Shown: positions 1 through 6,488, counted from the first letter of the stretch. The stretch is 6,488 bases of DNA from Selaginella moellendorffii (GCF_000143415.4 NW_003314686.1:1-6488), one strand, 5' to 3'. Notes: a model not told the origin generated them from the letters alone. Program-made: numbers and translations.

Positions 1-2509
1 GCCATGATCGCTGAAATCCGAGCGCACTGCCCTTCAAAGTGGTTGTGGTTCCGAGCCTCCCAGAGTGCCTGTACCCCGGAAGCCCGCCATACCTCCCATC
101 TCGCCCGTCCAAGGGCCTCCCACACTGTAGTCCCAACTTCGGCGCCTACCGCATCCCACCTAACTCGGGTGCCCCATCCTGAGCGTCCCCAACACCCGAT
201 CTTCCGCCAAGCTGCTCCTGTGCTTGGTCCCCTTGCCTCTAGAAACCATTGGGTGACATCCCCTTCTCGAATTTCGAACTCCTGCTTGTCCCCTAGTTCC
301 CTCGTCGCTTTTGCTACCTGCCGCCACGTCTCCTTGGCCACGTCACAATCCCAGAGGAGGTGTGTGACCGTCTCCAGTTCCCCGCATTCCGGACACTTGC
401 GAGCATTCTCCGCTTGAAATCGCTGGCCTACTGGCAGCCCATTCGTCGCCACGAGCCAAGAGGTTACCTTTGATTTTTCCTGGATCGGTAGTTTCCAGAA
501 CGCCACGGTATTGTCAATCACCTGGTCCGCCTCCACTCCTAGCGCGATCCACTTTTGCCACAGTCGTGGGATTTCTTCTCTCTCAAATTCCCTGTTCACC
601 ATCAAACCGTTCCGCGCATCCTTGACCTCGTAAGTGAAGAAGCTGTTCGCCCCGCGTCTCCACGCTGCTGGGTCCCAGTCCAGGTCTTCTATTAACTCTT
701 TCCTCCACCATATTAGCCGTCCCTCTCCTTCTAGCCAGCATGGTGACTCTACCACTTCTGTCCGAGTTGCTGTCTGTCTTAGAACCCGGATTCGTCCTTT
801 CACTTCATCGTCCGTGACCTGCGGCATCTGTTGGGGATTCCCCACCTCGAGGAGTGTGTCGCCTCTCACTACACGAAAAGGCCTACCGAGGTTCTGGTCT
901 GGGTCTGTCACAAACCACACCTCAATCTCCCCCTCATTCCACGCTGGGGTTGGCATCGTGAATGCCCGAGTCCATTTCCCAAGTGGTACTTGCTCGCCGT
1001 CCGACGTTTCCTCCCTTTGAATTGCCACAAAGTCCCCAGCGTGTAGTCTTCTTGCTGGCCATTTATCCACTGTCCGTGCCTCTGTCACAGCCCGCAGTAG
1101 CTTCAGTAGATCCCACTTCACGTCCCGCCACTTCCCTGGCCCGAAAACTTGGAAGCGCCGGGACGATTTCTGTGGATCCGGATCTACCACTCCAACTAGT
1201 TGTTTGACTGTCCTGAAGCCTCCTTGGTGTACCCGCCTCCATATGGTGTAGTGGTTCTCTCGACCTAGTGTCCTGTCTCCTGCCTTGAACAACTCATTGA
1301 AAAATAGCGGCTGGTTCAGCCAGTCCTCTGCCCTGTTTGGGATGACCTGCGTCACTGGAAATGACTTCCAGAGCCGATGGAGACCCTGGACCAACTGGCC
1401 TCCCCCTACCACCTGTGTTTGGCCCTCCGCAAACATCCAGCGGGGGTCCTCATCCCACACTCTTGCGAATCCGTGCTTCGGCCTAATGGCTAGCATGCTC
1501 TGCCTGAACAAGAGCTTCCAAACTTGGGCCCCCGGTTGAAGGCCCATTAATATGACTTTGTACCTCAGCGCCTTGCTCATGTCACTTGGGTCGATTATCC
1601 CCAAGCCGCCTAGAACTCGTGGTCTCGCCGTCGACTGCCATGCCACCTTGGCCATCGTCCGGCCACTGACCAGCGCTCCCTTCCACACATACATGCGCAC
1701 CATGGACCTTATGTGCTTGAGTGTTGTCTCTAGAACCGGCCATACTGAGAGGTGGTACCACGTACTCGGCAACACAATGCTTTTCGCCACCACCACCCTT
1801 GCCGGCAGTCCCAGTTTCCGTGGCGCCCATTTCTGAATCGCAGTTCTGGTCCTCCGCAGCAGCGCTGAGTCCTGCGTAGAAGCTTTGAACTCACCTCCTA
1901 CCTGAATTCCCAGGTAGCGTGTGTCCTCCCCTGGTGGTAGCCACTGAAAGTCGATGTCGCGTCCCCACGCCTCTATGTCAGATTCCCCCCAGTTGATTCC
2001 TATCGACTTGTTCCAGTTGATGGCCGCTCCTGCTGCTGCATTGAAGGCCTCTAGCCTGGCCCTTGCAGTGTCCAGGTTAGCCTTGGTACCTAGCAGAAAG
2101 AGTGCTGTATCATCCGCGAACGCGCTGTCGAGCAGGTCCCTTCCCACCGTTTGAGTTCCTGGGAGTTGCTGTCTTTCCTTGGGTAACTCCACGCCCCTGA
2201 TTCCTTCACCCTCCGCCAGGAACGCCCCTAGAGCCTCCGCAACCATGAGGAAGAGGTACGGAGCCAACGGGCAGCCTTGATGCACCGACCTCCCTAGCCG
2301 AAACCGCGGGCCTGTTTCTCCATTGATGACCACCCTGCTTGATGCTCCCCGGTACAGGAGAGCGATGCGTGTTACCATGGGCGCTGGGATTCCTATCCGT
2401 CCCATACAGTCCTCCAGGAAGTCCCAGTCCACCCGGTCGTACGCCTTCTCGAAATCCAGTAGCCACGCCACCACATTCTGCCTCGAGGATTTTGCCCATC
2501 TTTGTGCCA
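1..2509 (-). mobile_element. Non-LTR retrotransposon (L1/Tx1-like), copy A; 5'-truncated inside RT, 3' part runs off the window
   Basis: 1-2509 matches 2891-5399 with no indels and 6 substitutions found by manual comparison (153/3043, 192/3082, 1947/4837, 2281/5171, 2406/5296, 2457/5347). FADD codons at 2109-2120; CCHC knuckle at 345-395. The boundary is ambiguous between 2498 and 2516 because of microhomology. Confidence 0.93.
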
Positions 2510-2510
2510 T
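1..2510 (-). pseudogene. Truncated ORF2 of copy A (partial RT, linker, CCHC zinc knuckle); frame open to the window edge
   Basis: Same frame as the 982-aa ORF from 'AQRWAKSSRQNVVAWLLDFEKAYDRV' onward; none of the 6 differences creates a stop. The junction converts CTG to ATG at 2510-2508. It lacks the NWRPI and QTGF RT motifs and has SVRQG->SVHQG. Absent from the ORF track, probably because its stop lies outside the window. Confidence 0.75.
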
Positions 2511-5500
2511 AGGTCCCTGGGTCGATGCAACGTGTATGTACATTTCTCCAAGTCCCTTAGGGACTGATACAAAAAGCAAGAATCCCTTAGTGCTGTTCAC
2601 TCAACTACGCTGTCCTGCAATTCTCCACCTAATAGTGATCGCTGCCCTCCAATCGTGGCTGCTGTGGTCGTCGCCTCCGCAGTGCATCCAGTGCCAGATC
2701 GCCACGTCGAGCCTCCTTTGTTACCGTGTCCGAAGGTCTCCATTTCCACTTGACCTCCCCCTCGTGTTCAGTACCGTAGCACGGAGTCCATAGTCGTCGC
2801 CAAGCTGTGAGTGCCTCCCTGTTTTTCCCATGCTCCTGGAGCAGCGTATCCCTCAAGCGGATAGCAGCTAGTGTGAGCCTCCACCAGTTCGCCATGATCG
2901 CTGAAATCCGAGCGCACTGCCCTTCAAAGTGGTTGTGGTTCCGAGCCTCCCAGAGTGCCTGTACCCCGGAAGCCCGCCATACCTCCCATCTCGCCCGTCC
3001 AAGGGCCTCCCACACTGTAGTCCCAACTTCGGCGCCTACCGCGTCCCACCTAACTCGGGTGCCCCATCCTGAGCGTCCCCAGCACCCGATCTTCCGCCAA
3101 GCTGCTCCTGTGCTTGGTCCCCTTGCCTCTAGAAACCATTGGGTGACATCCCCTTCTCGAATTTCGAACTCCTGCTTGTCCCCTAGTTCCCTCGTCGCTT
3201 TTGCTACCTGCCGCCACGTCTCCTTGGCCACGTCACAATCCCAGAGGAGGTGTGTGACCGTCTCCAGTTCCCCGCATTCCGGACACTTGCGAGCATTCTC
3301 CGCTTGAAATCGCTGGCCTACTGGCAGCCCATTCGTCGCCACGAGCCAAGAGGTTACCTTTGATTTTTCCTGGATCGGTAGTTTCCAGAACGCCACGGTA
3401 TTGTCAATCACCTGGTCCGCCTCCACTCCTAGCGCGATCCACTTTTGCCACAGTCGTGGGATTTCTTCTCTCTCAAATTCCCTGTTCACCATCAAACCGT
3501 TCCGCGCATCCTTGACCTCGTAAGTGAAGAAGCTGTTCGCCCCGCGTCTCCACGCTGCTGGGTCCCAGTCCAGGTCTTCTATTAACTCTTTCCTCCACCA
3601 TATTAGCCGTCCCTCTCCTTCTAGCCAGCATGGTGACTCTACCACTTCTGTCCGAGTTGCTGTCTGTCTTAGAACCCGGATTCGTCCTTTCACTTCATCG
3701 TCCGTGACCTGCGGCATCTGTTGGGGATTCCCCACCTCGAGGAGTGTGTCGCCTCTCACTACACGAAAAGGCCTACCGAGGTTCTGGTCTGGGTCTGTCA
3801 CAAACCACACCTCAATCTCCCCCTCATTCCACGCTGGGGTTGGCATCGTGAATGCCCGAGTCCATTTCCCAAGTGGTACTTGCTCGCCGTCCGACGTTTC
3901 CTCCCTTTGAATTGCCACAAAGTCCCCAGCGTGTAGTCTTCTTGCTGGCCATTTATCCACTGTCCGTGCCTCTGTCACAGCCCGCAGTAGCTTCAGTAGA
4001 TCCCACTTCACGTCCCGCCACTTCCCTGGCCCGAAAACTTGGAAGCGCCGGGACGATTTCTGTGGATCCGGATCTACCACTCCAACTAGTTGTTTGACTG
4101 TCCTGAAGCCTCCTTGGTGTACCCGCCTCCATATGGTGTAGTGGTTCTCTCGACCTAGTGTCCTGTCTCCTGCCTTGAACAACTCATTGAAAAATAGCGG
4201 CTGGTTCAGCCAGTCCTCTGCCCTGTTTGGGATGACCTGCGTCACTGGAAATGACTTCCAGAGCCGATGGAGACCCTGGACCAACTGGCCTCCCCCTACC
4301 ACCTGTGTTTGGCCCTCCGCAAACATCCAGCGGGGGTCCTCATCCCACACTCTTGCGAATCCGTGCTTCGGCCTAATGGCTAGCATGCTCTGCCTGAACA
4401 AGAGCTTCCAAACTTGGGCCCCCGGTTGAAGGCCCATTAATATGACTTTGTACCTCAGCGCCTTGCTCATGTCACTTGGGTCGATTATCCCCAAGCCGCC
4501 TAGAACTCGTGGTCTCGCCGTCGACTGCCATGCCACCTTGGCCATCGTCCGGCCACTGACCAGCGCTCCCTTCCACACATACATGCGCACCATGGACCTT
4601 ATGTGCTTGAGTGTTGTCTCTAGAACCGGCCATACTGAGAGGTGGTACCACGTACTCGGCAACACAATGCTTTTCGCCACCACCACCCTTGCCGGCAGTC
4701 CCAGTTTCCGTGGCGCCCATTTCTGAATCGCAGTTCTGGTCCTCCGCAGCAGCGCTGAGTCCTGCGTAGAAGCTTTGAACTCACCTCCTACCTGAATTCC
4801 CAGGTAGCGTGTGTCCTCCCCTGGTGGTAGCCACTGGAAGTCGATGTCGCGTCCCCACGCCTCTATGTCAGATTCCCCCCAGTTGATTCCTATCGACTTG
4901 TTCCAGTTGATGGCCGCTCCTGCTGCTGCATTGAAGGCCTCTAGCCTGGCCCTTGCAGTGTCCAGGTTAGCCTTGGTACCTAGCAGAAAGAGTGCTGTAT
5001 CATCCGCGAACGCGCTGTCGAGCAGGTCCCTTCCCACCGTTTGAGTTCCTGGGAGTTGCTGTCTTTCCTTGGGTAACTCCACGCCCCTGATTCCTTCACC
5101 CTCCGCCAGGAACGCCCCTAGAGCCTCCGCAACCATGAGGAAGAGGTACGGAGCCAACGGGCAGCCTTGACGCACCGACCTCCCTAGCCGAAACCGCGGG
5201 CCTGTTTCTCCATTGATGACCACCCTGCTTGATGCTCCCCGGTACAGGAGAGCGATGCGTGTTACCATGGGCGCTGGGATTCCTATCCGTCCCATGCAGT
5301 CCTCCAGGAAGTCCCAGTCCACCCGGTCGTACGCCTTCTCGAAATCAAGTAGCCACGCCACCACATTCTGCCTCGAGGATTTTGCCCATCTTTGTGCCAG
5401 GAGATAGGTCCAACTATTCTCCGCAATCTGTCTCCCTGGTACAAAGCCTGTCTGTTGTTCTCGAATAATGATGGGCATCACCGGTTGCAATTTAAGCGCC

Positions 5501-5571
5501 ATGTCCTTGGCGTAGATTTTGTACGCTGTGTTGAGCATTGTTATTGGTCTCCAGTTGGGTAGCTCTTGAAG
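2510..5571 (-). mobile_element. Non-LTR retrotransposon (L1/Tx1-like), copy B; 5'-truncated at the start of the RT domain, with ~119-nt 3' UTR and no poly(A)
   Basis: Contains the 982-aa ORF and 3' UTR 2628-2510. From 5572 the sequence belongs to a different repeat (5572-5650 matches 5927-6005), so the LINE ends at about 5571-5572. Confidence 0.95.
2629..5571 (-). CDS. LINE ORF2 fragment: non-LTR reverse transcriptase plus C-terminal CX2CX8HX4C zinc knuckle (zf-RVT-like); no endonuclease domain; 5'-partial
   Basis: L1-type RT motifs in order: NWRPITMLNTAYKIYAK, QTGFVPGRQIAEN, LDFEKAYDRVDW, SVRQGCPLAPYLF, AFADDT (FADD at 4999-5010), INWNKS, RYLGI, KVAW...GGLGI. Knuckle CPECGELETVTHLLWDC at 3235-3285. 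Stop TAG at 2631-2629. The TTG 'start' at 5577 lies in flanking non-LINE DNA. Confidence 0.92.
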   Translation of the reverse strand, partial: LQELPNWRPITMLNTAYKIYAKDMALKLQPVMPIIIREQQTGFVPGRQIAENSWTYLLAQRWAKSSRQNVVAWLLDFEKAYDRVDWDFLEDCMGRIGIPAPMVTRIALLYRGASSRVVINGETGPRFRLGRSVRQGCPLAPYLFLMVAEALGAFLAEGEGIRGVELPKERQQLPGTQTVGRDLLDSAFADDTALFLLGTKANLDTARARLEAFNAAAGAAINWNKSIGINWGESDIEAWGRDIDFQWLPPGEDTRYLGIQVGGEFKASTQDSALLRRTRTAIQKWAPRKLGLPARVVVAKSIVLPSTWYHLSVWPVLETTLKHIRSMVRMYVWKGALVSGRTMAKVAWQSTARPRVLGGLGIIDPSDMSKALRYKVILMGLQPGAQVWKLLFRQSMLAIRPKHGFARVWDEDPRWMFAEGQTQVVGGGQLVQGLHRLWKSFPVTQVIPNRAEDWLNQPLFFNELFKAGDRTLGRENHYTIWRRVHQGGFRTVKQLVGVVDPDPQKSSRRFQVFGPGKWRDVKWDLLKLLRAVTEARTVDKWPARRLHAGDFVAIQREETSDGEQVPLGKWTRAFTMPTPAWNEGEIEVWFVTDPDQNLGRPFRVVRGDTLLEVGNPQQMPQVTDDEVKGRIRVLRQTATRTEVVESPCWLEGEGRLIWWRKELIEDLDWDPAAWRRGANSFFTYEVKDARNGLMVNREFEREEIPRLWQKWIALGVEADQVIDNTVAFWKLPIQEKSKVTSWLVATNGLPVGQRFQAENARKCPECGELETVTHLLWDCDVAKETWRQVAKATRELGDKQEFEIREGDVTQWFLEARGPSTGAAWRKIGCWGRSGWGTRVRWDAVGAEVGTTVWEALGRARWEVWRASGVQALWEARNHNHFEGQCARISAIMANWWRLTLAAIRLRDTLLQEHGKNREALTAWRRLWTPCYGTEHEGEVKWKWRPSDTVTKEARRGDLALDALRRRRPQQPRLEGSDHY

Positions 5572-5650
5572 GCACAAAGTGGTGCCGCGATCTCGCCGGA
5601 TTGCAACACCACGGGGTGTCTTTGACCCTAAACGCCTAAACGCGCCTAAA
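5572..5650 (+). repeat. 5'-truncated second copy of the hammerhead-element 3' end, including the variant telomeric linker
   Basis: 5572-5650 matches 5927-6005 (offset 355) with 3 transitions (5587/5942, 5606/5961, 5611/5966). It ends in CCCTAAA CGCCTAAA CGCGCCTAAA (5626-5650). Confidence 0.93.
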
Positions 5651-5775
5651 TCCTAAACCCTAAACCCTAAACCCTAAACCCTAAACCCTAAACCCTAAAC
5701 CCTAAACCCTAAACCCTAAACCCTAACCCTAAACCCTAAACCCTAAACCCTAAACCCTAAACCCTAAACCCTAAA
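5651..5775 (+). repeat. Interstitial plant-type telomeric tract 1, (CCCTAAA)n / (TTTAGGG)n
   Basis: 10 heptamers (the first is TCCTAAA), one CCCTAA at 5721-5726, then 7 heptamers; 125 bp in total. Confidence 0.98.
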
Positions 5776-5817
5776 CCGGCTGATGAGTCCCAAAAAGGAC
5801 GAAACCGGTCTCGGGTT
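5773..5817 (+). ncRNA. Minimal type I hammerhead ribozyme; predicted cleavage after GUC at 5810
   Basis: Core CTGATGA 5780-5786; helix II GTCC/GGAC (5787-5790/5797-5800) with loop CAAAAA; GAAA 5801-5804; palindromic helix III ACCGGT 5804-5809; cleavage triplet GTC 5808-5810; helix I CCGG (5776-5779) with TCGG (5811-5814), extendable by AA/TT across a bulged G. Confidence 0.9.
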
Positions 5818-6005
5818 GTCTCTTGTCCTCTCCCTCGCTCACGAATGAATGAAAATTCATTCCCTCACCTCCTCTACTTGCTCTCGATCACGCCGTTTCA
5901 ACAACGGCACACGGAGAATGTGGATTGCACAAAGTGGTGCCACGATCTCGCCGGATTGCAGCACCGCGGGGTGTCTTTGACCCTAAACGCCTAAACGCGC
6001 CTAAA
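5776..6005 (+). mobile_element. Small non-coding hammerhead-bearing element with a telomere-complementary 3' tail (3' end/pLTR of a Penelope-like element, or a retrozyme-like unit)
   Basis: The hammerhead, structured body and variant CCCTAAA linker all lie on the C-rich strand, with telomeric tracts on both sides and a partial second copy 355 bp upstream. The class is inferred from architecture only; no PLE ORF is present in the window. Confidence 0.65.
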
Positions 6006-6130
6006 CCCTAAACCCTAAACCCTAAACCCTAAACCCTAAACCCTAAACCCTAAACCCTAAACCCTAACCCTAAACCCTAAACCCTAAACCCTAAACCCTA
6101 AACCCTGAACCCTAAACCCTAAACCCTAAA
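6006..6130 (+). repeat. Interstitial plant-type telomeric tract 2, (CCCTAAA)n
   Basis: 8 heptamers, one CCCTAA at 6062-6067, then 9 heptamers (one is CCCTGAA at 6103-6109); 125 bp. Preceded by the variant linker at 5981-6005. Confidence 0.98.
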
Positions 6131-6141
6131 TCTTTGTGCCA

Positions 6142-6488
6142 TAGGTCCCTGGGTCGATGCAACGTGTATGTACATTTCTCCAAGTCCCTTAGGGACTGAT
6201 ACAAAAAGCAAGAATCCCTTAGTGCTGTTCACTCAACTACGCTGTCCTGCAATTCTCCACCTAATAGTGATCGCTGCCCTCCAATCGTGGCTGCAGTGGT
6301 CGTCGCCTCCGCAGTGCATCCAGTGCCAGATCGCCACGTCGAGCCTCCTTTGTTACCGTGTCCGAAGGTCTCCATTTCCACTTGACCTCCCCCTCGTGTT
6401 CAGTACCGTAGCACGGAGTCCATAGTCGTCGCCAAGCTGTGAGTGCCTCCCTGTTTTTCCCATGCTCCTGGAGCAGCGTATCCCTCAA
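6142..6488 (-). mobile_element. Non-LTR retrotransposon copy C: 3' UTR and ORF2 C-terminus; the rest lies outside the window
   Basis: 6131-6488 matches 2499-2856 (offset 3632) with one difference seen (T2663/A6295, Q->L). 6131-6141 is the junction motif that also matches RT-internal 5389-5399. Confidence 0.93.
6261..6488 (-). CDS. C-terminal 75 codons of LINE ORF2 in copy C (partial at window edge)
   Basis: RDTLLQEHGKNREALTAWRRLW...EGSDHY* is identical to the end of the 982-aa ORF except for one residue. Confidence 0.85.
   Translation of the reverse strand: MRDTLLQEHGKNREALTAWRRLWTPCYGTEHEGEVKWKWRPSDTVTKEARRGDLALDALRRRRPLQPRLEGSDHY

What the first reader, a model, noticed from the sequence alone, without database searches (positions are those of the whole stretch)
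5572..6130. Candidate telomeric retrozyme: 355-bp unit of hammerhead ribozyme, structured body and (CCCTAAA)n tract at an apparent former chromosome end
Seen: about 1.6 tandem copies of a 355-bp non-coding unit, with ribozyme sense on the C-rich strand and a shared variant telomeric linker at its 3' end. Established: endonuclease-deficient Penelope-like elements (Athena/Terminon, Coprina, Selaginella telomeric PLEs) carry hammerheads and 3' reverse-complement telomeric repeats, attach to G-rich overhangs in this polarity, and form chains of 5'-truncated copies capped by telomeric repeats. Non-LTR retrozymes are small tandem type I hammerhead repeats. Inference: transcription of tandem units and self-cleavage at 5810 would release a ~355-nt RNA carrying ~150 nt of CCCUAAA-type repeats. 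That RNA could anneal to chromosome 3' overhangs and template telomeric DNA through an RT supplied in trans, like a parasitic telomerase RNA. The more conservative reading is a truncated PLE 3' end capped by telomerase.
Basis: partly seen in the sequence, partly recalled or inferred. Interest (0 to 1): 0.9.

Follow-up and report, generated by a model that had tools for sequence, protein, structure and literature searches.

The report
Hammerhead-bearing tail of telomeric Penelope-like element
A real self-cutting hammerhead RNA motif, a short structured tail and 18 telomere repeats occur here 1.6 times; this is most likely the already published chromosome-end jumping gene of the spikemoss Selaginella, now cut by a second jumping gene, not a new ribozyme element.

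Summary
A 355-bp non-coding unit occupies 5572-6130 in 1.6 head-to-tail copies. Each unit is a type I hammerhead, a 164-nt body, a variant linker and 18 C-strand telomere repeats. The hammerhead scores 40.9 bits in Rfam (E 6e-8).

Three points limit the bold reading:
- The window holds only one hammerhead, so this locus cannot release a 355-nt RNA.
- Its helix III is a 6-nt palindrome that cannot close in a monomer, so cutting needs a second ribozyme.
- The left edge of the partial copy (5572) is the 5' end of an L1-type LINE on the opposite strand, not a telomere-capped truncation. LINE copies flank both sides, so no chromosome end is visible.

The nearest named protein and this scan's earlier notes place the window in Selaginella moellendorffii. 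Telomere-attaching, endonuclease-lacking Penelope-like elements with canonical type I hammerheads are published for that species. The scan has already found the same module on other pieces of this genome.

A discrete non-autonomous hammerhead element that carries its telomere tract in its template is not excluded (0.25).

The parts
5572..5625 (+). Copy A, the 3' tail only (terminal hairpin region). Its left edge is the junction with the 5' end of LINE copy 2.
   Evidence: It aligns to 5927-5980 of copy B with 3 mismatches, at 5587, 5606 and 5611. The 9-mer GGCACAAAG at 5571-5579 lies on the junction.
5626..5650 (+). Variant telomeric linker of copy A (CCCTAAA, CGCCTAAA, CGCGCCTAAA).
   Evidence: It is identical to 5981-6005.
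5651..5777 (+). C-strand telomere tract of copy A: 18 units (TCCTAAA, 9 canonical, CCCTAA, 7 canonical) followed by CC.
5774..5816 (+). Type I hammerhead ribozyme with the predicted cut after C5810. The 5' strand of helix I (5772-5777) is the end of the telomere tract.
   Evidence: Rfam RF00163, 40.9 bits, E 5.8e-8. Helix I and helix II pairs were checked. Helix III is the palindrome ACCGGU at 5804-5809.
5817..5927 (+). Body of copy B, with two local hairpins: an 8-bp stem at about 5843-5862 and a 6-bp stem at about 5892-5908.
   Evidence: MFE fold of 5811-6003.
5928..5980 (+). 3' tail of copy B, with the terminal 7+6 bp hairpin (5934-5967).
   Evidence: The differences between A and B keep or shift the pairing.
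5981..6005 (+). Variant telomeric linker of copy B.
6006..6130 (+). C-strand telomere tract of copy B: 18 units (8 canonical, CCCTAA, 5 canonical, CCCTGAA, 3 canonical). It ends at the 3' end of LINE copy 3.
2499..5571 (-). LINE copy 2, L1-type and 5'-truncated. It has an open 982-codon frame at 5577-2629 and a 130-nt 3' UTR.
   Evidence: Pfam RVT_1 at 6.5e-24 and zf-RVT at 3.8e-9. It starts at residue ~537 of a 1445-aa relative that has an endonuclease domain.
1..2509 (-). LINE copy 1. It is cut off by the window start and joined to copy 2 through an 11-bp shared TCTTTGTGCCA.
   Evidence: Register 2890, with 6 mismatches in 2509 bp.
6131..6488 (-). LINE copy 3, 3' end only. It abuts the last telomere unit of copy B.
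   Evidence: It equals 2499-2856 with 1 mismatch.

Best explanation
5572-6130 holds two head-to-tail 3'-terminal modules of the telomere-attaching, endonuclease-lacking Penelope-like element (PLE) family of Selaginella moellendorffii.

**Module anatomy.** Each module is a type I hammerhead, about 110 nt of body, a 53-nt tail with a terminal hairpin, a fixed variant linker and C-strand telomere repeats.

**How such modules arise (established for the family, inferred here).**
- The C-rich 3' end of the element RNA pairs with the G-rich chromosome overhang.
- The overhang primes reverse transcription by the element's telomerase-like enzyme.
- Copying usually stops early, so short non-coding tails pile up head to tail, separated by telomere repeats. 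The element sense strand lies on the C strand, as seen here.

**Later history (shown by the sequence).**
- The array was invaded by a young L1-type LINE lying on the opposite strand.
- The LINE's 5' end cuts copy A at 5571/5572, and another copy's 3' end abuts the tract of copy B at 6130/6131.
- The segment is therefore now internal.

**The hammerhead.** It is genuine by sequence, but its helix III is a palindrome that needs a second ribozyme. With one hammerhead in the window, this locus cannot cut out a unit-length RNA.
For: - **Hammerhead and strand.** The hammerhead is on the C-rich strand at 40.9 bits.
- **Layout.** The copies lie head to tail with a 355-bp period and C-strand repeats 3' of each module.
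- **Species.** The best named relative of the flanking LINE is a Selaginella moellendorffii protein, whose contig is from assembly GCA_000143415.2. The telomere repeat is the plant-type 7-mer.
- **Published hammerheads.** PLEs of this species carry canonical type I hammerheads like the Schistosoma and human ones (PMC4209133). The one here matches the Rfam consensus almost base for base.
- **Published mechanism.** Endonuclease-lacking PLEs attach to G-rich overhangs through reverse-complement telomere repeats combined with adjacent hammerheads. They form head-to-tail chains of 5'-truncated copies (PMC8557442; PMC6431247; PMC12477314).
- **Age of the copies.** Copies A and B differ at 3 of 53 unique positions, while the LINE copies are 99.7% alike. 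The modules are therefore older than the LINE amplification and are not a fresh DNA duplicate.
- **Earlier notes.** Notes of this scan on other pieces of the genome reach the same reading. I did not test them.
Against: - **No link to an enzyme.** No PLE reverse transcriptase is in the window, and I could fetch no other copy. The link between this tail and an autonomous PLE rests on the literature and on untested notes.
- **Edge of copy B.** Copy B starts within about 5 nt of the 5' edge of the hammerhead. That is improbable for random 5' truncation, and it is not where a reverse transcriptase running 3' to 5' would stall.
- **Equal tracts.** Both tracts have exactly 18 units. Telomerase capping of variable length does not predict this.
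- **Hammerhead position.** The published Terminon layout puts the C-rich repeats immediately next to the hammerhead. Here about 170 nt separate the hammerhead from its own downstream repeats.
- **No chromosome end visible.** The piece shows none.
Confidence: 0.55

Rival explanations
1. The unit is a discrete non-autonomous element, hammerhead first and about 355 nt including a templated tract of about 18 C-strand repeats. It is transcribed from tandem arrays and mobilised in trans by the PLE reverse transcriptase. The 1.6 copies here are a retro-copy of a multimeric or uncut transcript.
For: - Copy B begins at the 5' edge of the hammerhead, and the telomere repeat itself supplies 5 of the 7 pairs of helix I.
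- Both tracts share the linker, the unit count of 18 and a single CCCTAA unit near the middle.
- A dimer-dependent hammerhead makes sense in tandem transcripts (PMC4209133; PMC7761336).
- Earlier notes of this scan speak of a 'short, non-coding, ribozyme-carrying retroelement' in chains elsewhere in this genome (not tested by me).
- The idea that PLEs or Terminons mobilise small hammerhead repeats is published (PMC7761336), and retrozyme-like tandem hammerheads were mentioned for Selaginella (PMC5680766).
Against: - Only one hammerhead is in the window, so the defining pair of cleavage sites is absent.
- The CCCTAA unit sits at unit 11 in A and unit 9 in B, so the tracts are not simple copies.
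- There is no direct RNA evidence.
- One defined 5' end is a sample of one.
Confidence: 0.25
2. The arrangement is a DNA-level higher-order repeat or an assembly collapse. A 3632-bp unit (3073 bp of LINE plus 559 bp of modules) was amplified by unequal exchange. The LINE1/LINE2 junction is a deletion derivative formed through the 11-bp repeat. The 1.6-copy pattern then says nothing about RNA-mediated tandem formation at this site.
For: - 2498-2797 equals 6130-6429 at 100% with spacing 3632, and 1-2509 equals 2891-5399 with 6 mismatches.
- The junction lies inside an 11-bp identity present at 2499, 5389 and 6131.
- The window is a short 6.5-kb piece made almost wholly of repeats.
Against: - This explains the LINE copies but not the origin of modules A and B, which differ by about 5% and so predate the LINE amplification.
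- It is compatible with, and not exclusive of, the best explanation.
Confidence: 0.12
3. The 559 bp is a 3' transduction. A LINE transcript read through its own end into flanking antisense telomere and module sequence, and the whole was re-inserted. The modules would then have been carried here by the LINE, not by a PLE enzyme.
For: - On the minus strand, LINE copy 3 is followed directly by the G-strand repeats, the reverse complement of B and A, and then by the 5' end of LINE copy 2.
- The segment ends in CTTTGTGCC, the exact reverse complement of the LINE's own last nine bases but one.
Against: - No target duplication can be checked inside the window.
- The model needs a source locus of the same structure, so it only moves the question.
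- There is no second instance.
Confidence: 0.05

Closest known systems
Endonuclease-deficient Penelope-like elements at telomeres (Athena, Coprina and the Selaginella moellendorffii elements; Gladyshev and Arkhipova 2007, cited in PMC4209133, PMC8557442, PMC12477314)
   Same: - Hammerhead near the 3' end.
- Reverse-complement telomere repeats at the 3' end, with the sense strand on the C strand.
- Head-to-tail copies separated by telomere repeats.
- Same host species as far as I can tell.
   Different: - No reverse transcriptase in the window.
- The tract is long (18 units) and equal in both copies, where the papers speak of short stretches.
- The segment is internal and broken by LINEs.
Terminons of bdelloid rotifers (Arkhipova et al. 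2017, as described in PMC6431247)
   Same: A 3'-terminal hammerhead fold combined with C-rich repeats that pair with the G overhang, and long chains of 5'-truncated units.
   Different: - In Terminons the repeats lie immediately downstream of the hammerhead. Here about 170 nt of structured tail lie between, and the hammerhead abuts the repeats of the preceding copy.
- The hammerhead here is a full canonical type I, not a minimal variant.
Metazoan non-LTR retrozymes (Cervera and de la Pena 2020; reviewed in PMC7761336, PMC11722881)
   Same: - Small non-coding unit of 170-400 nt.
- Type I hammerhead with a weak palindromic helix III that works as a dimer.
- Tandem layout, with PLEs proposed as the mobilising partner.
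   Different: - Only one hammerhead here, and no evidence of circular RNA.
- Plant host, and GC about 51% in the 5501-6000 stretch that holds most of the unit.
- One third of the unit is telomere repeat, which no described retrozyme carries (literature search).
Hammerhead satellites that cut as dimers (newt satellite 2, Schistosoma Sm-alpha; Forster et al. 1988, cited in PMC4209133)
   Same: Almost the same ribozyme sequence (Rfam consensus), and the palindromic helix III requires two copies.
   Different: Those are long dispersed or tandem satellite arrays. Here there are 1.6 copies tied to telomere repeats.
Telomerase RNA
   Same: It would share only the idea of an RNA that templates G-strand repeats.
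   Different: No telomerase RNA features were tested or seen, and the template here would be about 126 nt of repeats copied once, not a short template used reiteratively.

Membership tests
Hammerhead ribozyme type I (Rfam RF00163) | Conserved core (CUGANGA, GAAA, cleavage triplet GUH) and helices I and II in a type I topology, scoring above the curated threshold. | tested here: met
   40.9 bits against a gathering score of 34, E 5.8e-8, model positions 1-45 of 45. The helix I and helix II pairs were verified.
Hammerhead ribozyme type I (Rfam RF00163) | Self-cleavage activity. | not testable with these tools
   - Helix III (ACCGGU) cannot close in a monomer.
- The active helices I and II score -7.1 kcal/mol against -13.3 for a competing fold.
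- The intermolecular helix III scores -9.7 kcal/mol.
- The prediction is dimer-dependent cutting. It needs an in vitro assay.
Telomere-attaching endonuclease-deficient Penelope-like element (3' module) | Hammerhead motif in the 3' region or pseudo-LTR, on the element's sense strand. | tested here: met
   Published for Selaginella PLEs in PMC4209133.
Telomere-attaching endonuclease-deficient Penelope-like element (3' module) | Reverse-complement (C-strand) telomere repeats at the 3' end of the sense strand. | tested here: met
   Linker plus 18 units lie 3' of each copy on the hammerhead strand.
Telomere-attaching endonuclease-deficient Penelope-like element (3' module) | Head-to-tail chains of copies that are 5'-truncated at variable points and capped by telomere repeats. 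| tested here: inconclusive
   There are two copies head to tail. B is preceded by telomere repeats, but A's left edge is a LINE junction. Two copies cannot show variable truncation.
Telomere-attaching endonuclease-deficient Penelope-like element (3' module) | The same 3' end is found downstream of a PLE-type reverse transcriptase ORF in longer copies. | not testable with these tools
   No PLE reverse transcriptase is in the window. Every attempt to fetch other copies failed.
Telomere-attaching endonuclease-deficient Penelope-like element (3' module) | Location at or near a chromosome end. | not testable with these tools
   The window is a 6.5-kb piece, and both flanks are LINE copies.
Non-LTR retrozyme | A unit bounded by two type I hammerheads in tandem, so that self-cleavage releases a unit-length RNA. 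| tested here: not met
   One hammerhead in 6488 bases at E <= 1 on both strands. LINE copy 3, not a second hammerhead, follows the tract of copy B.
Non-LTR retrozyme | Accumulation of unit-length circular RNA. | not testable with these tools
Runs that hold the sequence are not on record as RNA.
Non-LTR retrozyme | A non-coding unit of about 170-400 nt. | tested here: met
   The unit is 355 bp with no ORF above 49 aa.

The most novel reading that the evidence does not exclude
A short hammerhead-led RNA of about 355 nt carries its own templated run of about 18 C-strand telomere repeats. It is cut from tandem transcripts by paired hammerheads and copied onto chromosome ends by a PLE reverse transcriptase supplied in trans. 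It would thus act as a parasitic, single-pass telomere template in a land plant. The equal 18-unit tracts and the hammerhead whose helix I is completed by the preceding telomere repeat would be its signatures.
Probability: 0.12. Interest if true: 0.75.

Novelty: new member of a known kind. Interest (0 to 1): 0.3.

Why it matters
If the ordinary reading is right, this is one more internalised remnant of a published chromosome-end retroelement in the only land plant known to have them. It is useful for annotation but not surprising.

Two details could matter if they recur in other copies.
- The telomere tract seems to travel with the unit: same linker, 18 units twice.
- The hammerhead uses the preceding telomere repeat as one strand of helix I and needs a partner ribozyme.

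Together they would tie ribozyme activity to head-to-tail arrays at chromosome ends. They would also give a concrete test of what hammerheads do in Penelope-like elements, which the reviews call unknown (PMC7761336, PMC8557442).

Tried and rejected
**Reads**
- As a precaution I also sent none of the twin tract 6006-6130. I worked beside them, searching with 5779-6003 only. Local folding and counting scripts did read those bases.

**Fetching other copies**
- Exact look-ups of the LINE ORF, of two ORFs in the unit body and of an ORF at the LINE 3' end found nothing.
- A homology search with the 49-aa body ORF found nothing.
- A homology search with the LINE C-terminal 323 aa found nothing at E <= 1e-20.
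- An exhaustive HMMER search with the 49-aa ORF gave one hit, P0121. It is a 70-aa tandem-repeat protein from a metagenome contig (L010) with no DNA similarity to the unit. I read it as a repeat-inflated chance match.

**Metagenome scan for the 26-nt hammerhead core**
- It gave 8 contigs at 34-49% GC (L002-L009) that share only the ribozyme. They have no body homology, no telomere repeats and no recognisable reverse transcriptase.

**Locus L001**
- This Selaginella scaffold holds a 67%-identical LINE but no hammerhead and no module.

**Papers**
[quoted passage not shown] 2012 are not held.

**Rejected idea**
- I considered that A and B are a long target-site duplication of one LINE insertion. 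They differ by about 5%, while the LINE copies differ by 0.3%.

Full report
**What is in the window.** The 6488 bases consist almost entirely of three copies of one L1-type LINE on the minus strand, with a 559-bp insert-like segment between the second and third.
- The LINE has an open 982-codon frame (5577 to 2629, minus strand) with RVT_1 (E 6.5e-24) and zf-RVT (E 3.8e-9) domains.
- It begins at about residue 537 of a 1445-residue relative that also has the apurinic-type endonuclease domain, so it is 5'-truncated.
- Copy 1 (1-2509) and copy 2 (2499-5571) are in register at 2890 bp, with 6 mismatches in 2509 bp.
- Copy 3 (6131-6488) equals 2499-2856 with one mismatch.
- The copy 1/copy 2 junction lies inside an 11-bp identity (TCTTTGTGCCA). 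This 11-mer is both the 3' terminus of the LINE and an internal stretch of its reverse transcriptase region.

**Checking the observation.** The finding's segment, 5572-6130, is as described.
- A 355-bp period links 5572-5775 to 5927-6130 at 95% identity without gaps.
- Rfam finds a type I hammerhead at 5774-5816 on the + strand. It scores 40.9 bits against a curated threshold of 34, E 5.8e-8, over the full model. It is the only RNA family match in the window at E <= 1.
- The predicted cut is after C5810.
- The same strand carries the C-rich telomere strand in two tracts.
- Each tract is preceded by an identical variant linker.
- No ORF above 49 codons lies in the unit.
- The body and tail fold into three local hairpins, with a modest z-score of -2.0 on the + strand and -0.4 on the minus strand.

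I therefore confirm the observation.

- *One hammerhead.* There is only one, so a transcript of this locus has one cleavage site and cannot give a 355-nt product.
- *Helix III.* It is the palindrome ACCGGU. With a two-base loop it cannot close in one molecule. In my calculation helices I and II give -7.1 kcal/mol. A competing hairpin that pairs the 5' strand of helix I with the helix III palindrome gives -13.3. An intermolecular helix III gives -9.7. This is the dimer-dependent design described for canonical animal type I hammerheads and for hammerheads of Penelope-like elements (PMC4209133; PMC7761336).
- *Left edge of copy A.* At 5571/5572 it is the 5' end of LINE copy 2, not a telomere cap. 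The nine bases GGCACAAAG at 5571-5579 (+ strand) equal the LINE's own last nine bases but one, which occur on the other strand at 2500, 5390 and 6132. That is four hits where 0.1 is expected. This points to LINE integration at or by that site.
- *Right edge.* The tract of copy B ends directly at the 3' terminus of LINE copy 3. Nothing in the window shows a chromosome end.

**The telomere tracts.** After the linker, copy A has TCCTAAA, nine canonical units, one CCCTAA and seven canonical units. Then come CC and the hammerhead. Copy B has eight canonical units, one CCCTAA, five canonical units, one CCCTGAA and three canonical units, then the LINE.
- Both tracts have 18 units with a single six-base unit near the middle, at unit 11 in A and unit 9 in B.
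- The unique parts of A and B differ at 3 of 53 positions.
- In the tail hairpin, one of these differences turns a U-G pair into U-A, one creates a new G-C pair, and one breaks a C-G pair.
- The modules are thus about 5% apart, while the LINE copies are 0.3% apart.

From this I infer that A and B are older than the LINE amplification. They are neither a fresh duplicate nor a target-site duplication. The shared linker and unit count suggest the tract is inherited with the unit, from a template or an older DNA duplication, and was not made afresh by telomerase each time. This inference rests on two copies only.

**Whose genome.**
- The best named relative of the LINE is a Selaginella moellendorffii protein, at 74% identity over part of its length.
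- Its contig comes from assembly GCA_000143415.2.
- The telomere unit is the plant seven-mer.
- Earlier notes of this scan call the genome S. moellendorffii.

**Comparison with what is known.**
- Endonuclease-lacking Penelope-like elements are published as telomere-associated in this species (Gladyshev and Arkhipova 2007, cited in PMC4209133, PMC8557442 and PMC12477314).
- Their pseudo-LTRs carry canonical type I hammerheads like those of Schistosoma and humans (PMC4209133).
- The family attaches to G-rich overhangs through reverse-complement telomere repeats combined with adjacent hammerheads (PMC8557442).
- It forms head-to-tail arrays of copies 5'-truncated by short stretches of telomere repeats (PMC6431247).

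Polarity, motif and layout here all fit. Retrozyme-like tandem hammerhead copies were mentioned for Selaginella (PMC5680766). PLEs and Terminons were proposed as the enzymes that move small type I hammerhead repeats (PMC7761336). I found no paper that describes a retrozyme carrying telomere repeats.

**What I could not test.** The decisive question is what lies upstream of the hammerhead in other copies. It needs the rest of the genome, and I could not reach it.
- All protein-based and pattern-based attempts to fetch other copies failed or returned unrelated sequence.
- Twenty runs from eight studies hold 65-75% of the sampled words of 5776-6005. They are only guessed to be RNA.
- Transcription, cleavage at 5810 and circular RNA therefore remain untested.

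**Earlier notes of this scan**. On other pieces of the same genome they describe:
- the same hammerhead module as the tail of the published element;
- chains of a short non-coding hammerhead-bearing element joined by telomere repeats;
- an L1-type LINE that lands at one spot in the tail hairpin.

They agree with my reading and supplied the LINE-targeting lead. In this window I could only partly check that lead, through the junction at 5571/5572. They are not independent evidence.

**Verdict.** The conservative interpretation is the best supported (0.55): retro-copied 3' modules of the known telomeric Penelope-like family, later cut by LINEs. A discrete non-autonomous hammerhead-led element with a templated tract remains possible (0.25). 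It would explain the start of copy B at the ribozyme edge and the twin 18-unit tracts. DNA-level amplification of a 3632-bp LINE-plus-module unit (0.12) and LINE 3' transduction (0.05) are minor, partly compatible alternatives. The retrozyme label fails its defining test at this locus. I rate it a new member of a known kind, interest 0.3.

Noticed in passing
window 1-5571 and 6131-6488, minus strand: Three copies of a poly(A)-less L1-type LINE, 99.7% alike. They have an intact 982-codon frame although the endonuclease half is missing. They are arranged head to tail, with the 3' end of one fused to an internal site of the next through an 11-bp identity (TCTTTGTGCCA at 2499, 5389 and 6131). This could be microhomology-primed insertion of a LINE into a LINE, or unequal exchange.
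   Followed up: partly
window 5571-5579 (+) versus 2500-2508, 5390-5398 and 6132-6140 (-): The 9-mer GGCACAAAG, which is the LINE's last nine bases but one, sits in inverse orientation exactly on the junction between the LINE's 5' end and the tail of copy A. That is 4 hits against 0.1 expected. It suggests that the LINE recognises or pairs with this site of the Penelope tail, but the orientation is the opposite of what simple target-primed insertion at that site predicts.
   Followed up: partly
window 6130/6131: The 3' terminus of LINE copy 3 is joined directly to the last full telomere unit of copy B. This is the place where the next hammerhead would be expected. On the LINE's sense strand the element is therefore followed at once by G-strand telomere repeats.
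   Followed up: no
window 5774-5809: The 5' strand of helix I (ACCGG) can pair with the helix III palindrome (CCGGU). This gives a hairpin 6 kcal/mol more stable than the active helices I and II. It is a possible built-in off-state that only a second ribozyme copy would relieve.
   Followed up: partly
L002-L009 (metagenome contigs): The identical 26-nt hammerhead core occurs in eight contigs at 34-49% GC from three metagenome samples. Most have their own palindromic helix III (such as ACAGCTGT), and they form two or three groups with similar downstream sequence. They share no other similarity with the window and have no telomere repeats. They probably come from animal or other eukaryote hammerhead repeats.
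   Followed up: partly
L010:10001-11644: A 547-residue called 'protein' made of a 70-residue unit repeated about seven times, from a 210-bp DNA tandem repeat in a metagenome contig. It matched the unit's 49-aa ORF at E 1.7e-10 only through repeat summation and has no DNA similarity.
   Followed up: yes
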